The notes below the pieces were generated by a model. It had not been told where the DNA came from. It made no database searches and saw nothing but the letters and a program-made list of their open reading frames with translations. This document shows positions 31,868-52,567 of a DNA stretch of 53,257 bases, piece by piece. The number at the start of each line of letters is the position of its first letter. The first letter of the stretch is position 1. The stretch comes from Klebsormidium nitens (Eukaryota > Plantae > Klebsormidiophyceae). Where the stretch lies: contig DF237416.1 in the NCBI GenBank assembly GCA_000708835.1, forward strand, positions 21,896 through 75,152, given 5' to 3'. A program made the translations under genes and the position numbers.

Positions 31868-34800
31868 TCATGATGAGCACGACAGCTGGCATACGCCCCG
31901 CTTCGTCGCCCAAGTCGGGGGGAGGGCAGCATACCTGCGAGCACAGAAGTGACAGGCTGATCTCGGTAAAGGTACGGACGACTTGGCTCACTACGAAGGT
32001 GCAAGTTGCCAGCCAAACAACGACATCGGTCCATCTCGTGCGCATCGCAGCTGGTTGCCTGCGGCCAGCGCCTCAGGCTCTTTACCGCCGCAGTGCATGC
32101 GCCGACAAGAACAATGTACTTCACAAACTTAACGAAGAACGGACTCGTCTGTCTTTCCAGAAAAGTTCAAGCTGCCCCCAGCTCTGCATCCCCGACGGTC
32201 CTCGGTATCGAATGTCAGAAACTAAAACTGATTGCATGCTTTTTCATTTAAGCACTTTGCACTGTTCCCACCTCTCCATTCCCGGCTGGTCTTCGTACGG
32301 CGTCCGCACGAGGCGCAGCAGCGTCCGCACCTCGCCGAAGTCGCCCTTCTCGGCCGCATCGATCGCGTTCTGCAGCATGTAGTTGCGGAGTACGTACCGC
32401 GGGTTGACGCGGTCTATGGCCGCCTTGCGCTCAGCGTCGGGCGTCCCTTGCTTTTTTAGCTGCACAGGGGTGTTTGCGCGTAAGAAAAGGGCGTGGGGAT
32501 TCGAACAAGAGCAAGGCCAGACTTTCAGCCTCTCCTGCTGTTGAAGCTATGACAACCTTGGAACAACAGATCAGCGTGTTCTGAAAGTGCATCTTAACAT
32601 CTGCTGCCACAATCGAGACGTTTTCGGTCTTCGAAAGACCCGCGGCGCCGGTTCAGGATACACGGCCATCCTGCGAACAGTCAGCTTCGCAACCCACGGA
32701 CCCCGACGGCCTTTTTATCTTGTTCCTGAGAAGTGGAGCGGGACACACAGCACCTTCCCTGCGGAAGCGAAGTCGGAAGTAGGTGCATGGATTCTACCAT
32801 GCTCGCCTATGAGTTCCTGACGGGCTCAGCACATTAGCGCGCGACAGTCTGGCGCAGACAGGCGAGATGCAATAATTTCTTAGAAATGAAGCCGGGCCTT
32901 CTTAGGCCTACAGACGCAGCTATTCAGACGCTTGCCCACCTTGACGATGTAAATCCGCATCCACTGCGCCCAGTCCCCCTTCACACTCCCCTCGGGAAGC
33001 ACTCCCTCGACCGACCGCAGCAGCCCTTCTTCCGTTCCCTCTTCACCCGGCCCTTCCGTCGTCACTCCGCTGAGCGCCCGGAACAGATTCGTAAAGTCCA
33101 CTTTGTCTCGCTTCATGAGCGCCAGAAGCGCGGTCGTGAAGTCCCCGTCGAAAGTCGCCATCCCTAGTTTGGCCGCCATGCGGTGTGAATACTCGACGCC
33201 GAAGGTTTGAGGGAAGACCGCCATAAGGGCCCGCGCCTCGGCCGCCGTCAGGAGGCCCCCCGCAAAGAACGCGTTCGCCAGCTGTTAAAAGGTGACTGGT
33301 TAGCGCAGCGAAGGAGATTGCATGTGGGCAAACTATTGCAGGCTTTCAAAGTCAGACAATGCCTCGTGCGGCGCCACGTGGCCGACTTCATCATTGTTTC
33401 CAAAAGACACAATCCTTTGAGCCGACGACGACGAGATCAAAATAATCGCCCGACGGACGGTCTGACGAGACTGTCAGGATGGTGCAGAGTCTCTCTTCAT
33501 CCTGGACCCATCAGACGTGATGTTCAAAAGCTTCGTGCGGTGTAACGGCGTCGGCACGATGCAGGAGCCTTGTATTCGCCGCCCCAATCTGATGGTCTAA
33601 TCAAAGGTGGCCAAGCTTCTCCCGGCCAGCAATCAATGGGAAACGGCTGCAACACTTGAATGCAGATCGCCGAGGTCCAAGCAAGCTCCAATCCGAACAG
33701 TCAAACCTTCTCCTAAGAACAAAAAAGTCGATGCTCCTTTTGTGAACAGTTCAACCTCACGTACAACCACACGCGACCTGAGTCCTTAGCCCTTCAAGAA
33801 GTCCTGATCAGCCTTCCAACAAGAGTCCGGTTCTTGTCCATCCTTGCGTCTCACGATTCCTGCTTTCCTCACCTGCACCATGTTCCAGAGCACGACGTCT
33901 GGCTGGATGCCAAACGCGTACCGCCCCGTGGGGTCGCTCGTGTTGGGCGTGAACTGGTCGCTGTACGCGTCGAGAAACGCAAAGGGGCCGTAGTCGAGCG
34001 TCAGGCCCAGGATGCTCATGTTGTCCGTGTTCAGAACGCCGTGGACGAAGCCGACCTGCGGGGAAAGCGGTCGGTGCAATCACGGAGAAAGGTAAAATGG
34101 TCTGAGCGACAAAGCGATAGTCTTGAGGATGAAGAGGGGAGGGATCACGGATGTCGAGATTGTCAGTAAAGCAGGGAGTTTTCAGTAGGAAAAGCTTCGG
34201 GCCACAGGGCTGCTGCTGTTTTTGTTGGTATATTGAAGACCGAAAAAGAAATTCGGATTTTCCAGTGTGCACCCGCGATGCAGAAGAGAGGTCTATTCTT
34301 GCGACCGAGATGTGGAGTAGAAAGACTCACCGCTTGCCAATATGCCACGAGTCTTCCCGTCCGCTCTGCTACCTCCTTAAAAAGCGCCGCGTACTCATTA
34401 TACTTCCCCGAAACTCCCTCCTCCCCGTCAATTCCACTCATTTCAGCTTCCGCGACTTGCCCCCTCCTATTCTCCAGCCCGGTTTTCAGCTTCGGAAAGT
34501 GATGCTCGATCATGTAATCCGCGAGAAATTTCACCAACTTCGTCTCTTTGCCCCCCCTTTCCGCCGGTAACTGAAACGTTCCAAACCGCACAAACGACGG
34601 CGCCATGCGGCAGACCACCGCGCCCGGCTCCAGGTTCGGGTGCCCGTCGTAGAACATGTCTCTGTGCACCCCCGTCCCCGTGCCGACAAGCGTCAACGCG
34701 CGAGTGGTCGGCACCCCGAGCCCGTGCATGGCCTCGCTGCACAGAAACTCGCGCAGGGAGCTCCGAAGAACCGCTTGCCCGTCAGCTGACCGGCTGTAAG

Positions 34801-36045
34801 GGGTCCTCCCCGCGCCCTTGAGCTGTAGCTCCCAGCGCTCCCCCTGGGGGGTCAGAACTTCGCCGAGCGTGACTGCGCGCCCATCGCCTAGTTGGCCCGC
34901 CCACGTGCCAAACTGGTGGCCGCCGTAATTCTGGGCGTATGTGGTCCTGAGGAAGAGCCGTAAAGGGCGTGGTGACGTTTGATAGGGTGGAGGGATGCAA
35001 AGTATTGGAGACACGAGTGATCCCTGCTTTCAGCAAGAGTTGGGAGGGCATCAAGCGTCAAAGACCTCCGCTTGTCTTCATATGCTGGCTGTGTGACATA
35101 TCGATTTTAGCGGAGACGCCAATGACTAAGATGCCCTTGACCTCCATGGAGCCTTCAATGAACGGCTGGGAGGGACTTTCTGCGGCTTACATTTGTTTGC
35201 AATCTTCATGCTGGGTAGCCCCTACAAACAACTATGGAACCATCTTCCTTTCTAACCTACGTATTTATTACGAATGTGAGAAGCAAGACCGTCATACCCA
35301 TTCCTTTTGGAGGTTCTTATATTCTTGATTTCATCACACCACTCCTTGTACACTGCATCAGACAGTTTCTCTACACCACACACCAACTTGTATTTGCAAC
35401 TCAATGGGACTGGCACAACCCTCAGAAGGTGGTGGAGTCCGGAGGTTCAAAAGAGATATCCTGAAAGTCCGAGATCTCACCAGCCGTCTAGCCGCTCTGC
35501 TCCCACAAAGATATAGGGGGCATCCACCCGCTCCAGCCTACACCATGGAGCAGAAGTTATTCATCCTGATGCAAACGCCTCAAGAAGTGCGTCATCAGAG
35601 ATATGTTCGCTGTTGGAAAAAGCAAGTGTGGAAGGGGCTCGTTTAGAGCACCAGTCATCGAACCTGATACTCAACCATAACAAGGGAGCTTTACTGCTGG
35701 ACAACTTCAACCACTTGCCATATACAAGAACTGTCCCTCAAAAGTCCGAGACCTTCAAGGGAGACCATCTTAGACTTCATCAAGTTACGGCATTGCAGCT
35801 CACTCCGCAGGGTCCAGCCCCAGGATGTTCTCAGCAACATCCGCTGAGTAGGCAATCATGTGGGGCTTGCTGATCTTGACTGATGGGGCCACGTAGCTGA
35901 AGAACGCATGGTGCACTTGTCGTGAGCCCCCGTCCCGCTGCTCGTCCCCAGGGAGCTCTCGCACAAAGGTGGTGTCCCATGCTAGTTCTTCCAGCTTCAG
36001 GAGGGGCTTGGGCGCGCCGCCTTGCTCGAATTCATGAGGGCTCAT
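31868..36045 (-). CDS. SELO: Protein adenylyltransferase SelO (pseudokinase AMPylase), Cys-containing form; an extra upstream targeting exon is possible
   Basis: [66 protein letters not shown], and last exon R|[21 protein letters not shown] (31934-31868). Confidence 0.95.
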
Positions 36046-41465: not shown

Positions 41466-41761
41466 ACAAAAGGTTGAGGAACGTCATTTGCACGCGGAAT
41501 TGACGTTTATATACCTTTTTGTTTACAAAGTACCATCCGAGCCGTACATAGTTTGTCGCCGGGAAAAAGGCTTTTCCGGTCGAGCCCCTGCAGGCCCTTG
41601 CGCTCGGTAAAAGAGGGAACAGGCGACTACCGGTCCCACGTACCGTAGTCACCAGCGTACCTACAATTTCAGACAGGGTACCTATCGAAGGGTGCTTGGA
41701 AACGTTGGAGGTGAGCGTCAGGAAGCGCTTGAGCGAAGGTTCCAAGCGCGCCAACGGAGTG

Positions 41762-44700
41762 ATGCTCCGCCAGGTGGCCTTGCTGCTGAGGCAGCGTCTG
41801 GAGGCCTCACCTGGACTGCACGGGCCTCGTTTGGGCAGGGGCCGTCTGCTGGAGTGTACTCAGCGCCTGCAAGAATGGGCGCTATCGGATGACAGTACAA
41901 GGCAACAAGCGTTCTGTGAAAACCAAACTGAGGCGCAGTGTTTGGTGGCGCCGCGCAGAAATGAAAAGAGGAGTGAATGGGAGTGCCATCAGGCGGACTG
42001 CTCGGCACTAGCTTGTGATGAACCAGGAGGCATTGATGGTGGTACATCTCAGAACAATCAATGCCAGGTCAGGTTGTCAGGATGGGCTTTGGTGAACCAC
42101 AGGAGATGCTCCGCAGGCGCAGCGCGCGGTGGAAATCAGCAGATTGCTTTGCCATTCAGCGCGCTTCAGTTCAACAGCCACCACGCTTGGCTGCCGGGAT
42201 ATGACTCATTTGCTCTGCATGGTCACAAGTCGTACAGTGGCGCCGGGGGCCCCCTCACAAGTACCGCCCACTCCAAGCTGCAGCAACCCCTCCCAACCCC
42301 CCCCAATGGATCAGTTGGTCCCATAGCTGCCCTTGCTCCTTCCCACCCCGCTTCACAAAACTCTTCCACCACCCCCATCGAGGACCCCCCAGTGTCAGGA
42401 ACAGCTCCCAAACGCCCGCTGCTCAAGTCCGGAGTGCTCGATGGCCCCCCCACCGCAGTCTCTCACTGGCTGCAGCGGATCTGTCCTCCGCGCATCTGGC
42501 CTTACGTGCAGCTTGGGCGGTACGACAAACCGATTGGGACATGGCTTCTCGCATGGCCTTGCTTTTGGTCTATTGCGCTGGCGGCTCCCCCAGGCGCGCT
42601 CCCAGACCCAGTGCTATTGGCGTGGTTTGGAGCAGGGGCGATCGTGATGAGGGGGGCGGGGTGCACGGTCAACGACATGTGGGACCAGGACATCGATTCT
42701 AAGGTGGGGGTTTGGGATGACTTGAGCCGCAATCTCTGAAAGATTGGTTCGAAGCGGGGTAACTTTTATTGTCCTAAGTAGCTCACTGTATAGGCATTGG
42801 GCAAGCTATCCAATTCTTCTGCAGACAAACCCAATCTGCATGAAAGGTCAAACCTGGACGATGTCAACGTAAGGAGTGCCATACTGTTGTGAATCGTCCT
42901 ACCAGCACAGGGAGGATTGGTCAGTAACCTAGGTCCCGTAACCTAGGTACCCAGGTTATGTCTAGGTTACGGGACCTAGGTTGTTAACAACCTTGGCATC
43001 ACCTAGGTTACTGTACTAACTTTTGAGTTATGCATAGTTTACGCGAACCGGGGTGCCTAGGTTGTGAACAACCTGGGCAGCACCCAGGTTACATAGATTC
43101 GCACCTTGGTTACGCACAACCTGGGTAGCTTATCCATAACCTGGGAATGTAACGGTGTATAGACTTTGTTTGGAGTACGTTTGCTGACCAAAGGAGCAAT
43201 AGTAGAATGGTAAGGCGCTTGATTCTGGTAGGCACGCTACAGAACGTTGGTTCGAGCCCAAGCGCTTACAGTGGTGCTCTTTTTTTCTCGTCCCAAAATG
43301 GCTTTGAAAAGCACCAAAACAAACACTTTCCCACTCGGTTTTCTCTTTTCCTTTTTGATTTTGACTTTCTTGCGACTTGGGCATGCTTTGGTCCGCTCTT
43401 GGCTACAAGATTGTGTCACTCTTGAGAAAAATTTCAAGTTCCATAACGGCCAAAGAGCATCACAAAGTTTCCTTTTTCTCTCTTTGCGCACATGAGTTAT
43501 CAAGAAACTAGCTCGAAGTTGTTTGCAACCCGGGTCTGCATGGGTTGTGCAGAACCTACTTAGGTCAAGAGCGCCACTCAACCCAGGTCCGAGGTTACCT
43601 GGGTTGCTACCTGGGTTACACCACAACCTATGCAATAACCTGGGTACAACCTGCCCAGTTTAGCAACCAATCCCCCCTGTGCAGGATACGTCTATTTCTG
43701 GTCACTAGCAGTTTACAAGCTTGACCATAGTCCCGGAAGAGTAGAGCTTGGGCTATGGATGGACATCAAGACCTGTAATCACATCCTGATCTGCCTTTCT
43801 CCGAACAGGTCTTTCGAACCCAGGACCGTCCCATTGCGTCCAAGCGCGTCTCTCCCCGCAAGGCCTTCCTCTTCCTGGCGGCCCAGTCGACCGTCGGCCT
43901 GGGCGTGCTCCTCCAACTGAACGACTTCAGCAAAGTGCTGGGCGCCTCTTCGCTCTTCCTGGTGGCCACCTATCCCCTTATGAAGCGCATCACCTCATGG
44001 GTGAGGCCCAGAATCTTGAGGTCAAATCAAATACCTGGAGGTTGTTGTCAGGTTTGAGTAGCTGTGCAATCACAGCCTTCATCCGGGTACTGTCTGCTTG
44101 GGAGTGTGCTCCTGTATTGCGTGAGAACTCGCTTCCCAACAAGCAGATTCGTTTGCTGCCCATGGTCAGACCAAATCAGGAACGGGTTTTTACTGCCTGA
44201 AAAGCGTCTGAAAACCAGTGTCCGTGTGGGATCTGGTAAAGGACCTCCCAATTCAGTATCGTTCGCAAAACGATCGAGCCCTTCGAGGTAACACCCCAAA
44301 ACCCTGGTCCCTTTTCAGCGCTGACACGTGGCCCCTCCTCCTGCAGCCCCAAGCCTACCTTGGGCTGACATTCAACTGGGGCGCGCTGCTCGGTTGGTCG
44401 GCCGTGAAAGGCAGTCTCTTCCTTCCCGCCGTCGGGCCCCTCTACGCTGCTGGCATCTGCTGGACGCTGGTGTACGACACCATCTACGCTCACCAGGTGG
44501 GTTTCGTACCTTGTATCGAAAAGCCGGTGTCAAAACCCCGGGGGAAAGACGCTGGTCATACTCGCCAGCTTGTTTTTTTCTGTATCCTTCATTCGCACAG
44601 CAGTCAGCCGGAGTCCTTTTGAATCTCACAACAGTGCTCGGTTGTTTGACACTCACGTGACATGTGTTGCAGGATAAAGAGGACGACAAGCTCGTTGGTG

Positions 44701-45566: not shown

Positions 45567-47079
45567 ATGACGCCACCAGCAAGGCACTAGCGCTCTCACA
45601 TCATCAACAGCAGATCAGCACTCTTCGAGCGAACTTGGGAATAACGCATGTGAGCGGCCCTTTCCCTTCGATAAGCTTGCGTCTGCATGGTGCAAAATCT
45701 GCGAAGAAATCAGCTTTCAGTGCACCTTTAGTCTCGATTGGCATCATTACAAAGCCATTAAGCGCAATGCGGTTTGCTTTTTGTTTTGCATCTCCTGCTT
45801 GTGCGGCCGTTTCGTGCTGTGGATCAGCAGATTTCACAAGGCTTGTTTTGGCAGGACGGATTCTTTTCATCGCAACGACGAGTTCTAGAGCGCCTCTGGC
45901 CGTCCAAGGAAACAAGCCGATGTTCCTGATCTTCAATAGTCAGCGAGGGCACTGATTCTTGTTGCTCTTATGTCTTCGCCTCTTTCAGGTGGCTGGCTCC
46001 TTCGTTATATCGCGAGTACCTGGGATTCGCCGTGACCTGCGAGGCCTGAGAGGTACCGCTCACCCATTCAACCAGTGGCGAGAAGCTTCCAGCCATAGAG
46101 TCAGTCGCTCAAACAATGATGAACAGGACCTGGATCTGAAGCTGTTCTGAGCAGTTTGTCGCACGCGTGAAAGAAAAGCGGGACTCAGACTCAAGATTTC
46201 GAGTTTAGACAGTGTTTTTAACCTGTCATTCCCCGAGGCAGCGTCCGCCCGTGGCACTTGCACTAAGTCGCCAGCATTCTCTGTGTCATGTACGCGTCTG
46301 GTGGTTATAACCACATGACGGCTACGGGCTTATAGGTGCTCGCGATTACCACGGTTACTATTAGGTTACCATCGGATGTAAATCCCATGACAGACCTGCA
46401 GTGCGCGTGGAAGTTGGAAGACCACGCGCGTGCACGGAACAGTCACGGTATAGCTATCACCAGTACGTCAACAATTAACATGCGTTCTGTACGTACACAA
46501 CTACTGACAGGTGCGTATTGAACTGAACTGGGCGGCCGGGCACGTGCCTCTGAGTGCTGCAAGCTACATGTTTTATCAATATTGTATACTAAGCGCAGCC
46601 GGCCTTGCAATAACTCACATATGCAAAGTATTTGTCATCATTCACGTGCATGATCGACGGCGGCGCTATGACAATTAGCTTATGCGCACATGATTTGTAG
46701 GGCCTGATATGCAGCTGCTGGCATGTGCAGCCGGCATGGCCAAGATCTGATTTGTCCAATTATGTATCAAGGCCCCTCACCGGCCAACTTAACCATTGAG
46801 GCATATAGGAGTATCGCATGCTAAGGCATGCACTGAGACCAGTCTTCGTCCTGGCAATGGCGACGTCGCACGCTGGCGGCGAACAAGTCCATGCAGTCAG
46901 TCATGTGACTCGGCCGCTAGGGCCTGATCGTATCTTTCCATTCAATCTTCGCTGAATATACACAGGTCCGTGTCAGAATTTTCCACTTAAGCAATTGCCG
47001 CATGCCCTGCCAAATGTCCGCACAACCTATCATCAGACAATGAACAACGCCTCCGCGGCTCTATTGACTGACAAGGACG

Positions 47080-50000
47080 CTACCTTATAGTCCGTTCTGT
47101 TGAAAAGACTTGCTCCTCCGTCTCCCTTCCTATCCGCTTCCGGCAGAAGTTTACCGAGCACGCTTCCGCGAAACTTCGTACGCATCTTACATCCCCCAAC
47201 CCGTACTCTCGACTGTAGCTGTCAGCCGGAGGGGCGCCGCACAGACTACACACCTCTCCCCCTTCCTTTCGCTCCGTGCACAGAAAGCTCTTCACCTGCC
47301 GTTCCGACGCCGCGCGAGCTTTCAGATCGGGCTTCCGAGATTCCCGGAAGAAGGGCCTGTGCTCCCTGGACCACTGGTGAAACACTAGAGCTTCCGGCGG
47401 CGCGTACACGTCCCAGCCGTGGGTGAACAACCGGACGGCCATGATCATCTCCTCCCCAAAGAAGAGCTCGGGTAGATGCGGGCTATATGGGACCTGCAGT
47501 CGGACAGGGGACTAATGAGCGACGCGACGGGGATCTGCTGGCATTGCACTTTGCAGTGCCGGCTAGGGTGGTGTGACGTGTTCGGGGTGACCCCAAACCG
47601 AGAAGCAAAAGCAAAAGCCAATCGGATGCCGGGCCTCAATGAAAACTGCATGTATTGCCCAATATCTTTCGAAATTGCAAACCTTTGCTAAGTCCGGGTA
47701 CTGGCAAGATTCCGGGGGGAGACCAGGATGAGGATAGCTGCATCATCGATGGCCTTGACTGGCATTGATTGAGAAGAACAACAGGTAGACCTCGAGACAA
47801 GGACGGCTGTCCTGAGACTGAACAAGAACTTGCAAATCGATGGGTCTCTCTTGATTGAGGATCCACAAGCCACGCACAGGCTCGCTCAGGCTGAAGGACC
47901 GTAAGCGGCCCCAAATGCACCAAAACCGTGGCAGGACTTAGAAGCACAGACCTCACAAAAAGCACTGCCTATTTCCTGGAGGAAGCGAGTCCCCTCTTAC
48001 CTCCTGGATTACCGCCGACCTCGAGAAAGAGAAGCCCGCCGCCCAGAAAGCGCTCCGCACCGGCTCTCCGCCCCGGGATTCCGCCCGGCGCCCCGTCATG
48101 CGCAGCAATCCGTCAGGCCCGAACTCTTTCGCGCACAGAAATGTGGGCCGCGAGTCTTCGGGAATTGAAGCGGCCGCCCCGAGACCTTCGTAGGGGGGCG
48201 GGTACGAGCTCAGCACCGCTTTCGGCGACCGCGTCTCGGCTGCTGCCAAGGCGGCTAGCAGCTTGGTGTCCCACTGGGGGGCGAAGCGCATGTGGGAGTC
48301 GATCTGTCGGGAAACGGGGCGTCATGGCTTTCTCAGCTAGCAAGGAGTAACCAGACTGTGCGGCGTGCGTTAGGTGACTCTGGCAAATCTCTGAACCCTT
48401 AATCTGGTCATGCATTGAGCATCCGAGTCGATATCGAAGTGGTTTAGGAACCACCTCAACGACGGCAGTCTGTGTGCTCGTCATAAGAAGTTCTTGCCAG
48501 TGACACTTAGACGGTCAGAAGCCCCGTTCATCCAACTTTCACCTACAGGAGCTTCCCGTTTTTCTCCAATGCAACCCGCGGCTCGACTCCATTCCAGCAT
48601 GAATCTGGAACGGCTTCGTTCTTGTGGACAGATTGAATTTTCTCTCTCAGATGGAGCTCCTTCTCCATACTTACAGACAGAGTCACTCTCCCACACCCCC
48701 TCACCTGCAGGAAGAACTCCTCCCCGTCCCACAGCTGCTGCGCCCGGTGCCGCGCCCAGCACGGCCCCGTCGCCTCGCGCCAGTCCACCCGCACCTCCCG
48801 CACGCGCTTCCGGGCGTCCTCGTCCAGCCCCCTGAGGTGCGCAAACTCGCAGTCGTCCCGCTCGTCGATCTGCCACACGATCCCTACCCAGACGCGACCG
48901 GGCAGGTCCGCTTTTCTGAAAAGGTCCTTGACAGTCCACCGGCACTCCGAATCACGGTAGCACACGAGTGAGACGAAAATGCGCTGGGCAGGGGAAAGAG
49001 AGTGGGAGGGGCCGGTAAGAGGAGGGTGTGGTGCAGAGGGGTGGATGGTGTTGACAGCATGAGTGCTTGTCTTCTGCGAGGTGGTTTCCAACGCGGGGTT
49101 GTCGCCAGCCTCTCGGGAACCTTTTCCCAAACCGTTGAGGCAGTCGCCTCTCTTGCTTGGGACCGTAGGTTCCGTTCTGCCAGTGTTGGAGCAACCCTCC
49201 GCTTGAGCCTCTTGTCCAGAACAACCCCCACCCGATTCTGATGCGTCTTGCTTCGCCCCCTCCGAGAACCACGCTGTGACAGCGAAGCGCTTGGCATGCG
49301 CCGGCAGTACTTCATGCTCCATCCCGCTCTCGAACAGCACCACGTTGCCTCCCATGGGAGGTAGGTCGATGCTGGCCCCGTCTTTCAGGAAGAGGCGCAG
49401 CTGTCCTCCGTCGTTGGGGGTCCATTCAGGGTTGAGGTAATAGAGCACGGTGACGGTGCGGTGGGGGCTGCTGGGAGAGCGGTCTCTGTGGCGGACGTAT
49501 CCGGCGCCCCCTCCCTGCGGCACAAAATCCGTGCTAAGATGCAAAGTACCAGGTCACAGCTCTCCTAGCATCTTCATCTGAACACCTTTGACAGCTTGAA
49601 CAAGACAAGGTTGTCAGAAGTGGTGAGTCGAAGCTGAGCCAGTCAAACCAGGGCTTCTCCAGTATTTAGCTAAACACTTGCAAGGAAGCCGGCCGACACT
49701 GATCTCAGCCTTCTATAAAAAGATACAGTGGCAGGATCAGAAAATGACAACGCTTGACAGCAAATTTCCTCACACCTTCTGATTGCAAGACTTCAATAGA
49801 TCAGAAAGTCAACAGCATATGTGAATTGCTGCAGAGAAGAATCTAGTGGTCTGACCTACCGGGTAGCAGGCAAGCTGGAAGGAAACGGGGCCTGACACAT
49901 CATAGCCTGCTTCTTGCAACGGTTGCTTCAAGCGCAGTAGCATCTGTGTCAGGGCTTGAAAGCTCTCCCAACCAGGCTGCAACACTTGGGCCGGCTTGAG

Positions 50001-50706
50001 CCACATACGCCGGTCCCCCCGAAAGTGTTGGTCGATCCACTGAGTCTCGGCTCCGCCCCCCATTTTAGCAGCCGTCATCTCTCCTTCTAGAGCACAGTCA
50101 GCACAGGAACGGGCAGCCGTCACCTGCGCAGGGGAATATCTGTTCATTACGGTGTGGTTTGCATTTGCAGCTGCACTCAATAGTTCACTGCAAACAGGGC
50201 CCGCTTTGCCGTCGTTTATTGAAGTGGTTCCCACCAGATTCACGCACATCAAGTGAATGCAGGACACTTGTTCAGTTTGCCAGACTGCTTGCAAGCAGCA
50301 TTGCATCCTGCTTTCGCACCACCCCAGGACAAAACGGGAAGAGTCGAGCTCTTACATCAAGCTCCACCAATTCTGCAGCATAGAGGACCAGGGAGTTGAT
50401 GTGGCTCACCAGCTCCTTTGTCACCGCTCCTTGGACTAGTGCGTATCCACTTCTTGCAAGTGTATCCACAGCGTCCATCAGGGGAGAGTCCTCATGACTC
50501 CATTGAAACACACTCTTGCTGGTCCCTGCCTCTTGAACAAATGAAGCCTCAGGACCGGAGTCAACTTCCCCGGCTGGACCCTTTCCCCCATTATTCAAAG
50601 ACGTCGCGGATTTTAGGGGTTGCTCTGACTTCTCAAGCAGCGAGAGGATGCGCAGCTGGCAGACGTCCGGTAGGTCAGAGATGGCGCGCACGGGAGGACC
50701 CATCAT
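47080..50706 (-). CDS. Fusion protein: F-box-like N-terminus + PhyA/EGLN-type prolyl 4-hydroxylase + Gnt1 (GT60) hydroxyproline GlcNAc-transferase, ~695 aa
   Basis: Five phase-0 exons: 50706-50410, 50123-49860, 49514-48705, 48303-48001, 47493-47080. P4H: RGDRRMW, CYP|GGGAGYVRHRD (HxD), MEHEVLP, KRFAVTAWF. GT60: RIFVSLVCYRDSEC, GPCWARH, LQ|IDSHMRF..WD, FWAAGFSFS, PELFFGEEM..RLFTHGWD. Confidence 0.9.
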
Positions 50707-51129
50707 GCAGAGTAGTATTGCCAGTCAGTCCAGCACATACGTACGTTTGGCCAGCTTTTCCAAGTTCCTGAGGTCATTCTCCAGCTAACTCTGCCGTGTT
50801 CAATCGCCTTGCGCGATCGGAAGTACTGCTGCTTGTCTCCATGGAGACTCATCATGGCCAGAAGCTGAAAGCGCTCGGAATCTTCCTCCGGGCAGTAACT
50901 CTGTACCCAGCGCGCAGAAGTTCCTTCCCGGGTACCCAGTTCCCGGGCAATGTCTACAGATGCACCGGCAAATGCATGATGAAGGTCTTTGTACAACCCA
51001 CACTCATGGTCCGTATCGGGAAAACCTCTCAAAACACCAAGGCATCGATATTGATCGAAAGCTTCGTAAGTCAAGTTCCGATATGTCAATACGACAGAAG
51101 GGCATTGGACTTGAGGGGCCCTGCCCACA

Positions 51130-51469: not shown

Positions 51470-51800
51470 CAAGCGGTGCAGATGCGCGCACATGGTTCTC
51501 CTTGCGCTAGGCTCTGGAAAACCGAGGATTTGCCTTGGGTGTTCTCGCGAAGGGACGATGCATGAAGCCCGCTCCACGACAATTGACCGAAGGCCGAGCC
51601 CGGCCGTACAAATGGCAACTTCGGGTCCTTACATGCGCCCATAGCCGACCTCGACCTAGATCGTTCGACGTGTAACAACGCATTTGCACCCAGTGGGCGA
51701 CACCTCGGGATTGTTGGCTCGTCGACACTAATCATGAGCTATTTTTTGGCAACATGCTGATTCATAATTTGTCTCCTGTTTGCACGTACACTCGTTGTCA
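51470..51800 (-). pseudogene. Degenerate pre-SET/AWS plus SET N-terminal exon
   Basis: One frame reads ECTCK..ACCQKIAHD*CRR..GCKCVVTRRTI*VEV..EVAICTAGLGLRSIVVE..HRL|gtgaga; three in-frame stops (TAG, TAG, TAA) in the Cys-rich/SET-N part. Confidence 0.5.
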
Positions 51801-51889
51801 AAAAGGGAATCGACAAAGGATGGGAGGGGGATGCGAGTCTGGAGGCACTGTTCGCGTTAGCACGTCCGTAGAGTCTTGGGTGGTGAAAG

Positions 51890-51995
51890 GAGTAACGTTT
51901 GTCTTCAGTGAAGCCGTGCTGCGTGCCTCCAATCGTCCATAATTCTTCTGGTACTTCTTTGGTAGGAGTTGAATCTTCCTGTATCTGATCGGCCT
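51890..51995 (-). pseudogene. tnpB: N-terminal stub of IS607 TnpB/Fanzor2
   Basis: IRYRKIQLLPKKYQK + frameshift + IMDDWRHAARLH* resembles the TnpB/Fanzor start (RxxKIRLYPxxxQ...W...AR) and overlaps the tnpA 3' end as in IS607. No convincing RuvC motifs follow. Confidence 0.55.
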
Positions 51996-51999
51996 GTCC

Positions 52000-52567
52000 C
52001 CGTTTGAGTAGTTTTTCTTCTGAGCGTTTGGTTCCCATGTAACATCGCCTTCCGTTCCATTTAGAACCAAACACCTGAATGACTGCAAGGACGTCCTCTG
52101 CAAGCTCTACCTCTGGAGACTTATCGTCTTCGTCGAGAACCACGAGGTTGACACCGTGTCTTTGAAAGTGCCATGCGAGCAGATCGAATCCGAATCGGCA
52201 CATGCGGTCCTTCGAGGCAACCACAACCTCGCGTACAGTGCCTCTCTTGCTCTGTTCCAAAAGGGATAAAAGTCCCTTCCTCTTTGAAGTTGAGCCCGGA
52301 GTCGATGTCCGTGACAAGGACGTGTCCAGGGTATTTTTCAAGCAGATACTGGGACTGACATCTAAGATCGTCCTTTTGTTTGCGGCTCGAAACCTTGGTG
52401 CAGACATACAATTGACGCTCTGCACTCTTTGGGCTGTCGAGGTCATAGAGACGTTGCCCTCCAGGGCTCTTGATTACAGAGATCTTTCCAGCTGCCTCTC
52501 ACCGAATAAGGTTTCGAGTACAGACGCCATAGTATGCGGTAGCCTGAGAGAGGCGGACATGTCTCAT
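52000..52567 (-). mobile_element. tnpA: IS607-family serine recombinase/transposase tnpA pseudogene (2 frameshifts)
   Basis: MerR-like HTH YGVCTRNLIRWE/AGKISVIKSPGGQRLYD, then KVSSRKQKDDLRCQ..YPGH..TDIDSGLNF/KRKGLLSLL..VVVASKDRMCRFGFDLL..ELAEDVLAVIQVF. Frameshifts near 52490 and 52290. Confidence 0.9.

What the first reader, a model, noticed from the sequence alone, without database searches (positions are those of the whole stretch)
47080..50706. One-polypeptide Skp1 hydroxylation/GlcNAcylation (O2-sensing) module in a green-lineage genome
Seen: a PHD/EGLN-like 2OG-Fe(II) domain with an intact HRD...H...R set, joined within a single exon (48705-49514) through a low-complexity linker to a GT60 domain with the DSH motif; no signal peptide or TM. 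Established: in Dictyostelium and Toxoplasma, PhyA hydroxylates a Skp1 proline and Gnt1 adds GlcNAc, tuning SCF ligases to O2; a PhyA-Gnt1 fusion is known from the oomycete Pythium; land plants instead sense O2 through the PCO/N-degron pathway. Inference: this alga keeps a protist-type, PCO-independent O2 sensor acting on SCF, which bears on the evolution of hypoxia sensing before land plants.
Basis: partly seen in the sequence, partly recalled or inferred. Interest (0 to 1): 0.85.

Follow-up and report, generated by a model that had tools for sequence, protein, structure and literature searches.

The report
Algal Skp1 hydroxylase–GlcNAc transferase fusion
This is a real, expressed gene of the alga Klebsormidium nitens that joins an oxygen-using prolyl hydroxylase to a sugar transferase, the same two-in-one enzyme that modifies the Skp1 ubiquitin-ligase subunit in water moulds. 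The gene is already in public databases and the fusion is common in algae and protists, so it is a correct but only moderately new finding.

Summary
A five-exon gene on the minus strand (CDS 50706..47080, 695 aa) encodes a PHD/EGLN-type 2OG-Fe(II) prolyl hydroxylase. A disordered linker inside one exon (49514-48705) joins it to a GT60 GlcNAc-transferase. Assembled contigs of probable RNA-seq runs (library type not on record) from four studies show all four introns removed, and one contig covers the whole mRNA. All catalytic residues are intact, there is no membrane segment, and both domains are under purifying selection.

The window is Klebsormidium nitens. The protein is already deposited as "N-acetylglucosaminyltransferase family protein". 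The same fusion occurs in chlorophytes, haptophytes, ochrophytes, oomycetes and chytrids, and the tree follows the species tree, so it was inherited vertically. The host SKP1 has the target proline (Pro146), but so do land-plant SKP1s.

The literature already says this pathway is widespread in protists, green algae included, and was lost in land plants. K. nitens also has a proven O2-sensitive PCO, so it carries both systems rather than one instead of the other.

The newest element is a conserved N-terminal LPxxLQxxILSL helix resembling the first helix of an F-box. It may be a Skp1-docking motif, but this is unproven. The scan had already noted this motif separately on this same window (s1-277716).

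The parts
46945..50803 (-). mRNA as seen in one assembled transcript contig: about 97 nt of 5' UTR, five exons, about 135 nt of 3' UTR
   Evidence: run X11 record 8 (2320 nt). It lies on 46945-47491, 47999-48303, 48705-49513, 49859-50119 and 50406-50803.
50410..50706 (-). Exon 1 (residues 1-99): start codon, N-terminal motif, disordered spacer, start of the hydroxylase domain
   Evidence: The splice joint is seen in 4 runs. An in-frame stop lies upstream of the ATG. My first donor guess at 50355 was wrong.
50635..50673 (-). N-terminal motif L12-L24 (LPDVCQLRILSLL), a predicted short helix resembling F-box helix 1
   Evidence: Helix 14-24 in the AF2 model. The motif is in 31 of 59 full-length fusions against 23 of 1563 control windows. 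Pfam F-box E 0.028, profile positions 1-19 of 43, below threshold. dN/dS 0.23 against the sister species.
49860..50123 (-). Exon 2 (residues 100-187): hydroxylase domain, including the invariant R134 and D136 (RGD)
48705..49514 (-). Exon 3 (residues 188-457): C-terminal half of the hydroxylase, the whole linker and the N-terminal part of GT60 in one exon
49287..49490 (-). Iron and 2OG ligands: H196 (49490-49488), D198 (49484-49482), H254 (49316-49314), R263 (49289-49287)
   Evidence: Invariant columns in alignment A2. The fold matches PPHD, PHD2 and DdPhyA at TM 0.75-0.87.
48999..49247 (-). Interdomain linker, residues 277-359, low complexity and disordered
   Evidence: pLDDT <50. 51% identity and dN/dS 0.61 against the ortholog in L001, with a 5-residue indel.
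48001..48303 (-). Exon 4 (residues 458-558): GT60 core with the DxH motif D459-S460-H461 at 48300-48292
47080..47493 (-). Exon 5 (residues 559-695 plus stop): C-terminal part of GT60

Best explanation
The gene encodes the Klebsormidium nitens ortholog of the dual-function Skp1 prolyl 4-hydroxylase/GlcNAc-transferase described from Pythium (PhyA plus Gnt1 in one chain).

Proposed mechanism:
- The protein is soluble and nucleocytoplasmic.
- Its PHD-type domain uses O2, 2-oxoglutarate and Fe(II) to hydroxylate Pro146 in the disordered C-terminal region of free SKP1.
- The GT60 domain, tethered by an ~80-residue flexible linker, then adds alpha-GlcNAc from UDP-GlcNAc to that hydroxyproline.
- Other enzymes may extend the sugar.
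- The modification is expected to shift SKP1 from homodimer towards F-box-protein complexes, tying SCF ligase assembly to O2 supply.

What is shown here: gene structure, single transcript, domain identities, intact catalytic residues, cytoplasmic topology, purifying selection, vertical descent, and presence of the target proline.

What is inferred: Skp1 as the substrate, from orthology and from the fusion itself.

What is inferred more weakly: that the enzyme works as an O2 sensor in this alga, and that the N-terminal helix docks on SKP1.
For: - Both Pfam domains lie in one exon.
- Spliced contigs from four studies, and one contig covering the full mRNA.
- The CDS is identical to public protein P0155 of K. 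nitens.
- H196, D198, H254, R263, D459 and H461 are invariant in 48 fusions.
- The AF2 model has two confident domains (pLDDT >90) joined by a disordered linker.
- The hydroxylase domain matches PPHD (TM 0.87), PHD2 and Dictyostelium PhyA 6t8m (TM 0.80).
- No TM segment.
- dN/dS is 0.17 (hydroxylase) and 0.14 (GT60) against a syntenic ortholog.
- The same architecture is found in Phytophthora and Aphanomyces. One Phytophthora cluster member is named 'hydroxyproline N-acetylglucosaminyltransferase' at NCBI, and one JGI relative is named '[Skp1-protein]-hydroxyproline N-acetylglucosaminyltransferase'.
- The tree recovers chytrids, stramenopiles, haptophytes and Viridiplantae (100/99), with K. 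nitens sister to the chlorophytes (99/96).
- Proteins with the opposite domain order (GT60 then hydroxylase) also exist, which argues for functional coupling.
- K. nitens SKP1 (P0297) ends ...NDFTP146EEEEDVRRENQWAFE.
- Literature: the Pythium PHD-type enzyme hydroxylates Skp1 (PMC7864055). Enzyme pairs of the pathway are often fused, and the pathway dates to LECA (PMC8724618).
Against: - There is no biochemical or mass-spectrometric evidence for K. nitens.
- By sequence the hydroxylase domain is nearer to bacterial PPHD (an EF-Tu hydroxylase, E 3e-29) and to animal PHD2 than to Dictyostelium PhyA (E 4e-10). The domain alone therefore does not name the substrate.
- The target proline is also conserved in land plants that lack the enzyme.
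- I could not check for PgtA, Glt1, Gat1 or AgtA homologues.
- I did not build a GT60 tree with Golgi-type enzymes and Dictyostelium or Toxoplasma Gnt1.
- A sensor role needs a high Km for O2, which is unknown.
- K. nitens already has an O2-sensitive PCO (PMC9585510).
- The Pythium paper itself could not be read here.
Confidence: 0.72

Rival explanations
1. The enzyme hydroxylates and GlcNAcylates a cytoplasmic protein other than Skp1, or several proteins. Skp1 is not its main substrate in the green lineage.
For: The hydroxylase domain is closest in sequence to PPHD, which acts on EF-Tu, and to PHD2, which acts on HIF. PHD-type enzymes have changed substrate repeatedly (PMC7864055). The Skp1 proline is kept in lineages without the enzyme, so its presence proves nothing.
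Against: The only substrate reported for a PHD-type/GT60 pair is Skp1, and the oomycete orthologs share this architecture (PMC7864055, PMC8724618). The N-terminal motif resembles the part of an F-box that contacts Skp1.
Confidence: 0.13
2. It does modify Skp1, but as a constitutive maturation step and not as an oxygen sensor. O2 sensing in this alga runs through PCO and the N-degron pathway or other routes.
For: KnPCO is active and has a very high Km for O2 (26-29% O2; PMC9585510). Nothing here bears on the O2 affinity of this hydroxylase. The transcript appears in all four runs laid, from four studies; the tool listed holders in seven studies.
Against: Dictyostelium and Toxoplasma PhyA are described as O2-limited in vivo (PMC3515798, PMC11570480). 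The two sensors could work in parallel.
Confidence: 0.3
3. The two domains are a gene-model artefact, or the gene is a decaying relic without function.
For: None found. My first splice model differed from the deposited one by 18 residues.
Against: The domain junction lies inside one exon. One contig spans the whole spliced mRNA. Catalytic residues are intact. dN/dS is 0.14-0.17 in both domains. The fusion is conserved across supergroups.
Confidence: 0.02

Closest known systems
Pythium ultimum dual-function prolyl 4-hydroxylase/GlcNAc-transferase (van der Wel et al. 2019, Glycobiology 29:705; cited in PMC8724618 and PMC7864055; called Phgt from my memory of the abstract)
   Same: Same domain order, PHD-type hydroxylase then GT60, in one cytoplasmic chain. 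The Phytophthora and Aphanomyces orthologs align over the full length at 33-36% identity and fall in the same family tree.
   Different: Different supergroup. The N-terminal motif is LPxxLQxxILSL here, but a diverged LSPxLxxLVEASLG in oomycetes. No biochemistry exists for the algal enzyme. The Pythium sequence itself was not in my set.
Dictyostelium and Toxoplasma PhyA plus Gnt1 (separate proteins)
   Same: Same two reactions are expected, on the same Skp1 motif. The model superposes on DdPhyA 6t8m at TM 0.80.
   Different: Two genes there and one here. Only 25-26% identity to DdPhyA. A comparison with their Gnt1 was not done.
Animal HIF prolyl hydroxylase PHD2/EGLN1
   Same: Same fold and the same HxD...H...R ligands.
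   Different: No GT domain, and the substrate is HIF-alpha. This alga has no such pathway described.
Lysyl hydroxylase LH3/PLOD (hydroxylase plus glycosyltransferase in one chain)
   Same: Analogous logic: an oxygenase makes the hydroxyl that the attached glycosyltransferase then glycosylates. UniRef labels this protein 'procollagen-lysine 5-dioxygenase', and the Atlas lists PLOD clusters as feature neighbours.
   Different: Different Pfam families (GT_PLOD, PF03171), a secretory location and lysine rather than proline. The UniRef label is a misnomer (PF03171 only at E 0.03).
Plant cysteine oxidase of K. nitens (KnPCO, PMC9585510)
   Same: Also an O2-dependent enzyme that feeds a ubiquitin-dependent degradation route in the same organism.
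   Different: Unrelated fold and chemistry (N-terminal Cys dioxygenation). It is retained in land plants, whereas the present enzyme was reportedly lost.
F-box domain (PF00646, PF12937)
   Same: Residues 12-24 match the hydrophobic pattern of F-box helix 1 (L-P-x-x-L-x-x-x-I-L-x-x-L).
   Different: Only positions 1-19 of 43 are matched. The score is below the Pfam threshold, and helices 2 and 3 are replaced by a disordered spacer.

Membership tests
Dual-function Skp1 prolyl hydroxylase/GlcNAc-transferase (PhyA-Gnt1 fusion, Pythium type) | PHD-type 2OG-Fe(II) domain with HxD...H and a 2OG-binding Arg | tested here: met
   PF13640 E 2.5e-18. H196, D198, H254 and R263 are invariant. Foldseek TM 0.75-0.87 to PPHD, PHD2 and DdPhyA.
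Dual-function Skp1 prolyl hydroxylase/GlcNAc-transferase (PhyA-Gnt1 fusion, Pythium type) | GT60 (PF11397) domain with the DxH motif | tested here: met
   PF11397 on three exons, E 5.5e-18 to 8e-23. D459 and H461 are invariant.
Dual-function Skp1 prolyl hydroxylase/GlcNAc-transferase (PhyA-Gnt1 fusion, Pythium type) | Both domains in one polypeptide from one mRNA | tested here: met
   The junction lies inside exon 49514-48705. A 2320-nt spliced contig covers the whole CDS.
Dual-function Skp1 prolyl hydroxylase/GlcNAc-transferase (PhyA-Gnt1 fusion, Pythium type) | Cytoplasmic: no signal peptide or membrane anchor | tested here: met
   Maximum KD(19) is 0.95. The N-terminus is a short amphipathic helix followed by a disordered spacer. 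No dedicated signal-peptide predictor was available.
Dual-function Skp1 prolyl hydroxylase/GlcNAc-transferase (PhyA-Gnt1 fusion, Pythium type) | Orthology to the oomycete enzymes | tested here: met
   The tree of 34 fusions follows the species tree and includes Phytophthora and Aphanomyces. Pythium itself is not in the set.
Dual-function Skp1 prolyl hydroxylase/GlcNAc-transferase (PhyA-Gnt1 fusion, Pythium type) | Host Skp1 carries the acceptor proline | tested here: met
   K. nitens SKP1 P0297 has NDFTP146EEE. This is necessary but not discriminating, because land-plant SKP1s have it too.
Dual-function Skp1 prolyl hydroxylase/GlcNAc-transferase (PhyA-Gnt1 fusion, Pythium type) | Hydroxylates and GlcNAcylates Skp1 | not testable with these tools
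   Needs an enzyme assay or mass spectrometry of native SKP1.
Complete Skp1 glycosylation pathway | PgtA, and Glt1/Gat1 or AgtA, homologues in the same genome | not tested
The scan's notes hold nothing on these genes.
Golgi polypeptide alpha-GlcNAc-transferase (GT60, Gnt2 type) | N-terminal signal anchor placing the domain in the lumen | tested here: not met
   The GT60 domain is internal, downstream of a cytoplasmic-type hydroxylase, and there is no hydrophobic segment.
F-box domain | A three-helix domain of about 45 residues that passes the Pfam gathering score | tested here: not met
   The K. nitens N-terminus scores 14.8 bits against a cut-off of 20.5, on profile positions 1-19 only. A profile search of the PDB found no F-box protein.
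Procollagen-lysine dioxygenase (PLOD), as labelled by UniRef | PF03171 and GT_PLOD domains | tested here: not met
   PF03171 only at E 0.03, below threshold. No GT_PLOD match.

The most novel reading that the evidence does not exclude
The conserved N-terminal helix (LPxxLQxxILSL, residues 12-24 here) is a minimal mimic of F-box helix 1. It would dock the enzyme on the hydrophobic groove of free SKP1 that F-box proteins use. The disordered SKP1 tail with Pro146 would stay free to reach the two active sites, and the enzyme would compete with F-box proteins. Because the motif is shared by chytrid fungi, haptophytes, ochrophytes, chlorophytes and this streptophyte alga, it would be an ancestral part of the pathway. 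It would also explain why these enzymes prefer free Skp1. A second new point is that K. nitens carries both the protist-type PHD/Skp1 system and the plant-type PCO system, so the former was lost only after Klebsormidiophyceae branched off.
Probability: 0.3. Interest if true: 0.65.

Novelty: new member of a known kind. Interest (0 to 1): 0.45.

Why it matters
- It places a protist-type, PHD-based Skp1 modification enzyme in a streptophyte alga close to the land-plant lineage, and in the same species in which an O2-sensitive PCO has been characterised. K. nitens is therefore a tractable organism for asking how the two oxygen-dependent routes to ubiquitin-mediated degradation coexisted, and when the Skp1 route was lost.
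- The vertical pattern across four supergroups suggests the fused form is old, and that the split genes of Dictyostelium and Toxoplasma may be derived.
- The N-terminal F-box-helix-like motif gives a concrete, cheap hypothesis for how these enzymes recognise Skp1. It fits recent evidence that another Skp1 glycosyltransferase, GAT1, binds the same hydrophobic interface (bioRxiv 10.64898/2026.06.11.731712).

Tried and rejected
1. My first gene model used a GTAAGA donor at 50355, which added 18 residues. The contigs show the GTGAGC donor after codon 99, with exon 1 ending at 50410, so I dropped it.
2. A profile of the N-terminal motif searched against PDB sequences gave only chance hits (ArsR, DppD, herpes gH) and no F-box protein.
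3. Pfam on exon 1 as a whole found nothing at E<=1. F-box appeared, below threshold, only when the 30-40-residue N-terminal pieces of 50 homologs were scanned singly.
4. The Pythium paper and the West & Blader review could not be opened. What I say of 'Phgt' beyond the citations in held papers is from memory.
5. Paper searches for Klebsormidium + SKP1 + hydroxyproline, and for 'Phgt', returned nothing.
6. Sequence search of the PDB found no solved GT60 structure. Foldseek's top 50 hits were all to the hydroxylase domain. I did not fold the GT domain alone.
7. A prediction of the complex between the N-terminal helix and SKP1 was not possible with the tools.
Full report
**What is there.** The minus strand between 50706 and 47080 carries a five-exon gene. 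I first built a model by eye from the ORF list and the sequence. Pfam on the exon translations gave these results:

| Exon | Pfam match | E-value |
|---|---|---|
| Exon 3 (49514-48705) | 2OG-FeII_Oxy_3 | 2.5e-18 |
| Exon 3 (49514-48705) | GlcNAc PF11397, the GT60 family | 5.5e-18 |
| Exon 4 | PF11397 | 3.2e-17 |
| Exon 5 | PF11397 | 8e-23 |

**Organism and public status.** A search seeded with the closest full-length relative returned P0155, 695 aa, 'N-acetylglucosaminyltransferase family protein [Klebsormidium nitens]'. It matched my model apart from 18 residues at the first splice donor. The window is thus K. nitens, a streptophyte (charophyte) alga. The gene product is already deposited at NCBI and UniRef with both Pfam domains attached. 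UniRef's automatic name, 'procollagen-lysine 5-dioxygenase', is a misnomer.

**Transcript.** The stretch is held by 20 public runs from seven studies.
- Their contig totals of 29-43 Mb, and shares of 0.5-0.9 of the sampled words, fit transcriptome assemblies. The library type is not on record.
- I laid contigs of four studies on 46700-51000. All four show the same four CT..AC (minus-strand GT..AG) joints.
- These joints give exons 50706-50410, 50123-49860, 49514-48705, 48303-48001 and 47493-47080.
- One 2320-nt contig covers 46945-50803 with all introns removed.
- The deposited donor is right and my first one was wrong. The CDS built from these joints equals P0155 exactly.
- An in-frame stop lies just upstream of the ATG.

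**Integrity and topology.**
- In an alignment of 48 full-length fusions (A2), R134, D136, H196, D198, H254, R263, D459, H461 and R463 are invariant.
- The AF2 model built on that alignment (mean pLDDT 79.8) has two confident domains at residues 67-276 and 360-684. Residues 26-66 and 277-359 are disordered, and there is a short N-terminal helix at 14-24.
- Foldseek puts the first domain on Pseudomonas PPHD (TM 0.87), Trichoplax PHD (0.82), PHD2 (about 0.78) and Dictyostelium PhyA 6t8m (0.80).
- No 19-residue window exceeds a Kyte-Doolittle mean of 0.95, so there is no membrane anchor. A Golgi GT60 or a plant cell-wall P4H is excluded on topology.

**Selection.** A Logan contig, L001 from SRR23617307, carries the ortholog from a related species. 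It has the same five exons and a convergent UbiA gene downstream, as in the window.

| Region | dN/dS (Nei-Gojobori) |
|---|---|
| Hydroxylase domain | 0.17 |
| GT60 domain | 0.14 |
| N-terminal motif (19 codons only) | 0.23 |
| N-terminal spacer | 0.96 |
| Interdomain linker | 0.61 |

**Distribution.** An exhaustive HMMER search with exon 3 against 1.84 billion cluster representatives gave 4899 hits.
- About 100 of the best 150 have the hydroxylase followed by GT60 in one chain.
- Chlorophytes with the fusion: Chlamydomonas eustigma, Edaphochlamys, Volvox, Pleodorina, Scenedesmus, Trebouxia, Coccomyxa, Bryopsis and Tetraselmis.
- The haptophyte Prymnesium has it.
- Ochrophytes with the fusion: Chrysoparadoxa, Phaeothamnion and Heterosigma.
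- The oomycetes Phytophthora and Aphanomyces have it.
- Chytrid fungi with the fusion: Spizellomyces, Rhizophlyctis and Nowakowskiella.
- A few proteins have the opposite order, and some are tandem GT60 arrays.
- A maximum-likelihood tree of 34 fusions recovers chytrids, stramenopiles, haptophytes and Viridiplantae (100/99). K. nitens is sister to all chlorophytes (99/96). That is the species tree, so descent was vertical and the fusion is old.
- No land-plant protein appeared among the named hits. This agrees with the published statement that the pathway disappeared in land plants (bioRxiv 10.1101/764241). It is not a proof of absence.

**Substrate.**
- I obtained a SKP1 probe by scanning metagenome contigs for the back-translated C-terminal motif and picking an intact Sphagnum-type ORF.
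- Searching with that probe returned 'SCF ubiquitin ligase [Klebsormidium nitens]', P0297, 161 aa. Its C-terminus reads ...NIKNDFTP146EEEEDVRRENQWAFE.
- The acceptor proline is present. The same motif is found in Sphagnum, Physcomitrium, Marchantia and seed plants, so the test cannot discriminate.

**What the literature already says.**
- Skp1 is hydroxylated by PHD-type enzymes in Dictyostelium, Toxoplasma and Pythium (PMC7864055).
- Genomes of green algae such as Chlamydomonas harbour pathway-like genes (PMC3515798).
- The algal fusion is therefore a new member of a described kind, not a new kind.
- K. nitens has one PCO, shown in vitro to be an N-terminal cysteine dioxygenase with a Km for O2 of 26-29% (PMC9585510).

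**N-terminal motif.** The scan had noted an F-box-like motif at 50632-50682 (s1-277716).
- It is conserved well beyond this species. A pattern [LF]P-x3-[QKR]-x2-[IVL]-[hydrophobic] occurs in the first 60 residues of 31 of 59 full-length fusions. In other 60-residue windows of the same proteins it occurs in 23 of 1563.
- Diverged versions occur in oomycetes.
- Aligned, the consensus is LPxxLQxxILSL, with an invariant Pro and a near-invariant Leu.
- Scanned singly against Pfam, 50 such N-terminal pieces most often hit F-box, F-box-like and PRANC. These gave 13 family hits, with a best E of 0.002. All are below threshold and all fall on the first 19 profile positions. K. nitens itself scores E 0.028.
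- A profile search of PDB sequences found no F-box protein.
- It is therefore not an F-box domain. It is a helix with the hydrophobic pattern of F-box helix 1, tethered by a 40-residue disordered spacer.
- Skp1 docking is plausible given that Toxoplasma GAT1 competes for the FBP interface of SKP1 (bioRxiv 10.64898/2026.06.11.731712), but it is untested. A nuclear-export or self-association helix is an alternative.

**Verdict.** The evolutionary framing is in line with published views but needs the PCO correction. Novelty is modest. The oxygen-sensor role, activity on SKP1, the rest of the glycosylation pathway and the docking idea all remain to be tested.

Noticed in passing
window 51739-52446 (-): A 235-aa ORF with a serine-recombinase Resolvase N-terminal domain (PF00239, E 1.3e-10) lies about 1 kb upstream of the gene, in a eukaryotic algal genome. 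It may be part of a mobile element. One run's contig (X1) continues from the gene's 5' end to at least 51000.
   Followed up: partly
window 50703-51128 (-): A 141-aa ORF with no Pfam match ends in a stop that overlaps the gene's start codon (ATGA). It may be coding sequence of the neighbouring element, or chance.
   Followed up: partly
window 41696-42739 (+) and L001 12024-12977 (-): A UbiA prenyltransferase exon lies convergent and downstream of the fusion gene, both in the window and in the related species' contig. Local synteny is therefore conserved. A SelO exon lies at 34166-35014 (-).
   Followed up: partly
proteins P0002, P0003, P0005-P0010, P0161, P0028, P0179: Very long proteins carry 2-4 tandem GT60 domains, some with peroxiredoxin (PF00578), GT2 or a terminal hydroxylase domain. 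Origin unknown; they may be polyproteins or read-through gene calls from protists.
   Followed up: no
proteins P0171-P0177; Atlas rows: GT60 domains are fused to SAM-methyltransferases in Alphaproteobacteria, and GT60-only clusters are assigned mostly to tailed phages. The family is not confined to eukaryotes.
   Followed up: no
proteins P0059, P0081, P0084, P0089: The same two domains occur in the opposite order, GT60 first and hydroxylase last. This suggests an independent second fusion.
   Followed up: no
Phytophthora nicotianae cluster of P0061: 'Variant' isoforms of 446-463 aa are deposited beside the 655-aa fusion. They keep the N-terminus and hydroxylase and are shorter than the fusion. 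This may be alternative splicing that uncouples the two activities.
   Followed up: no
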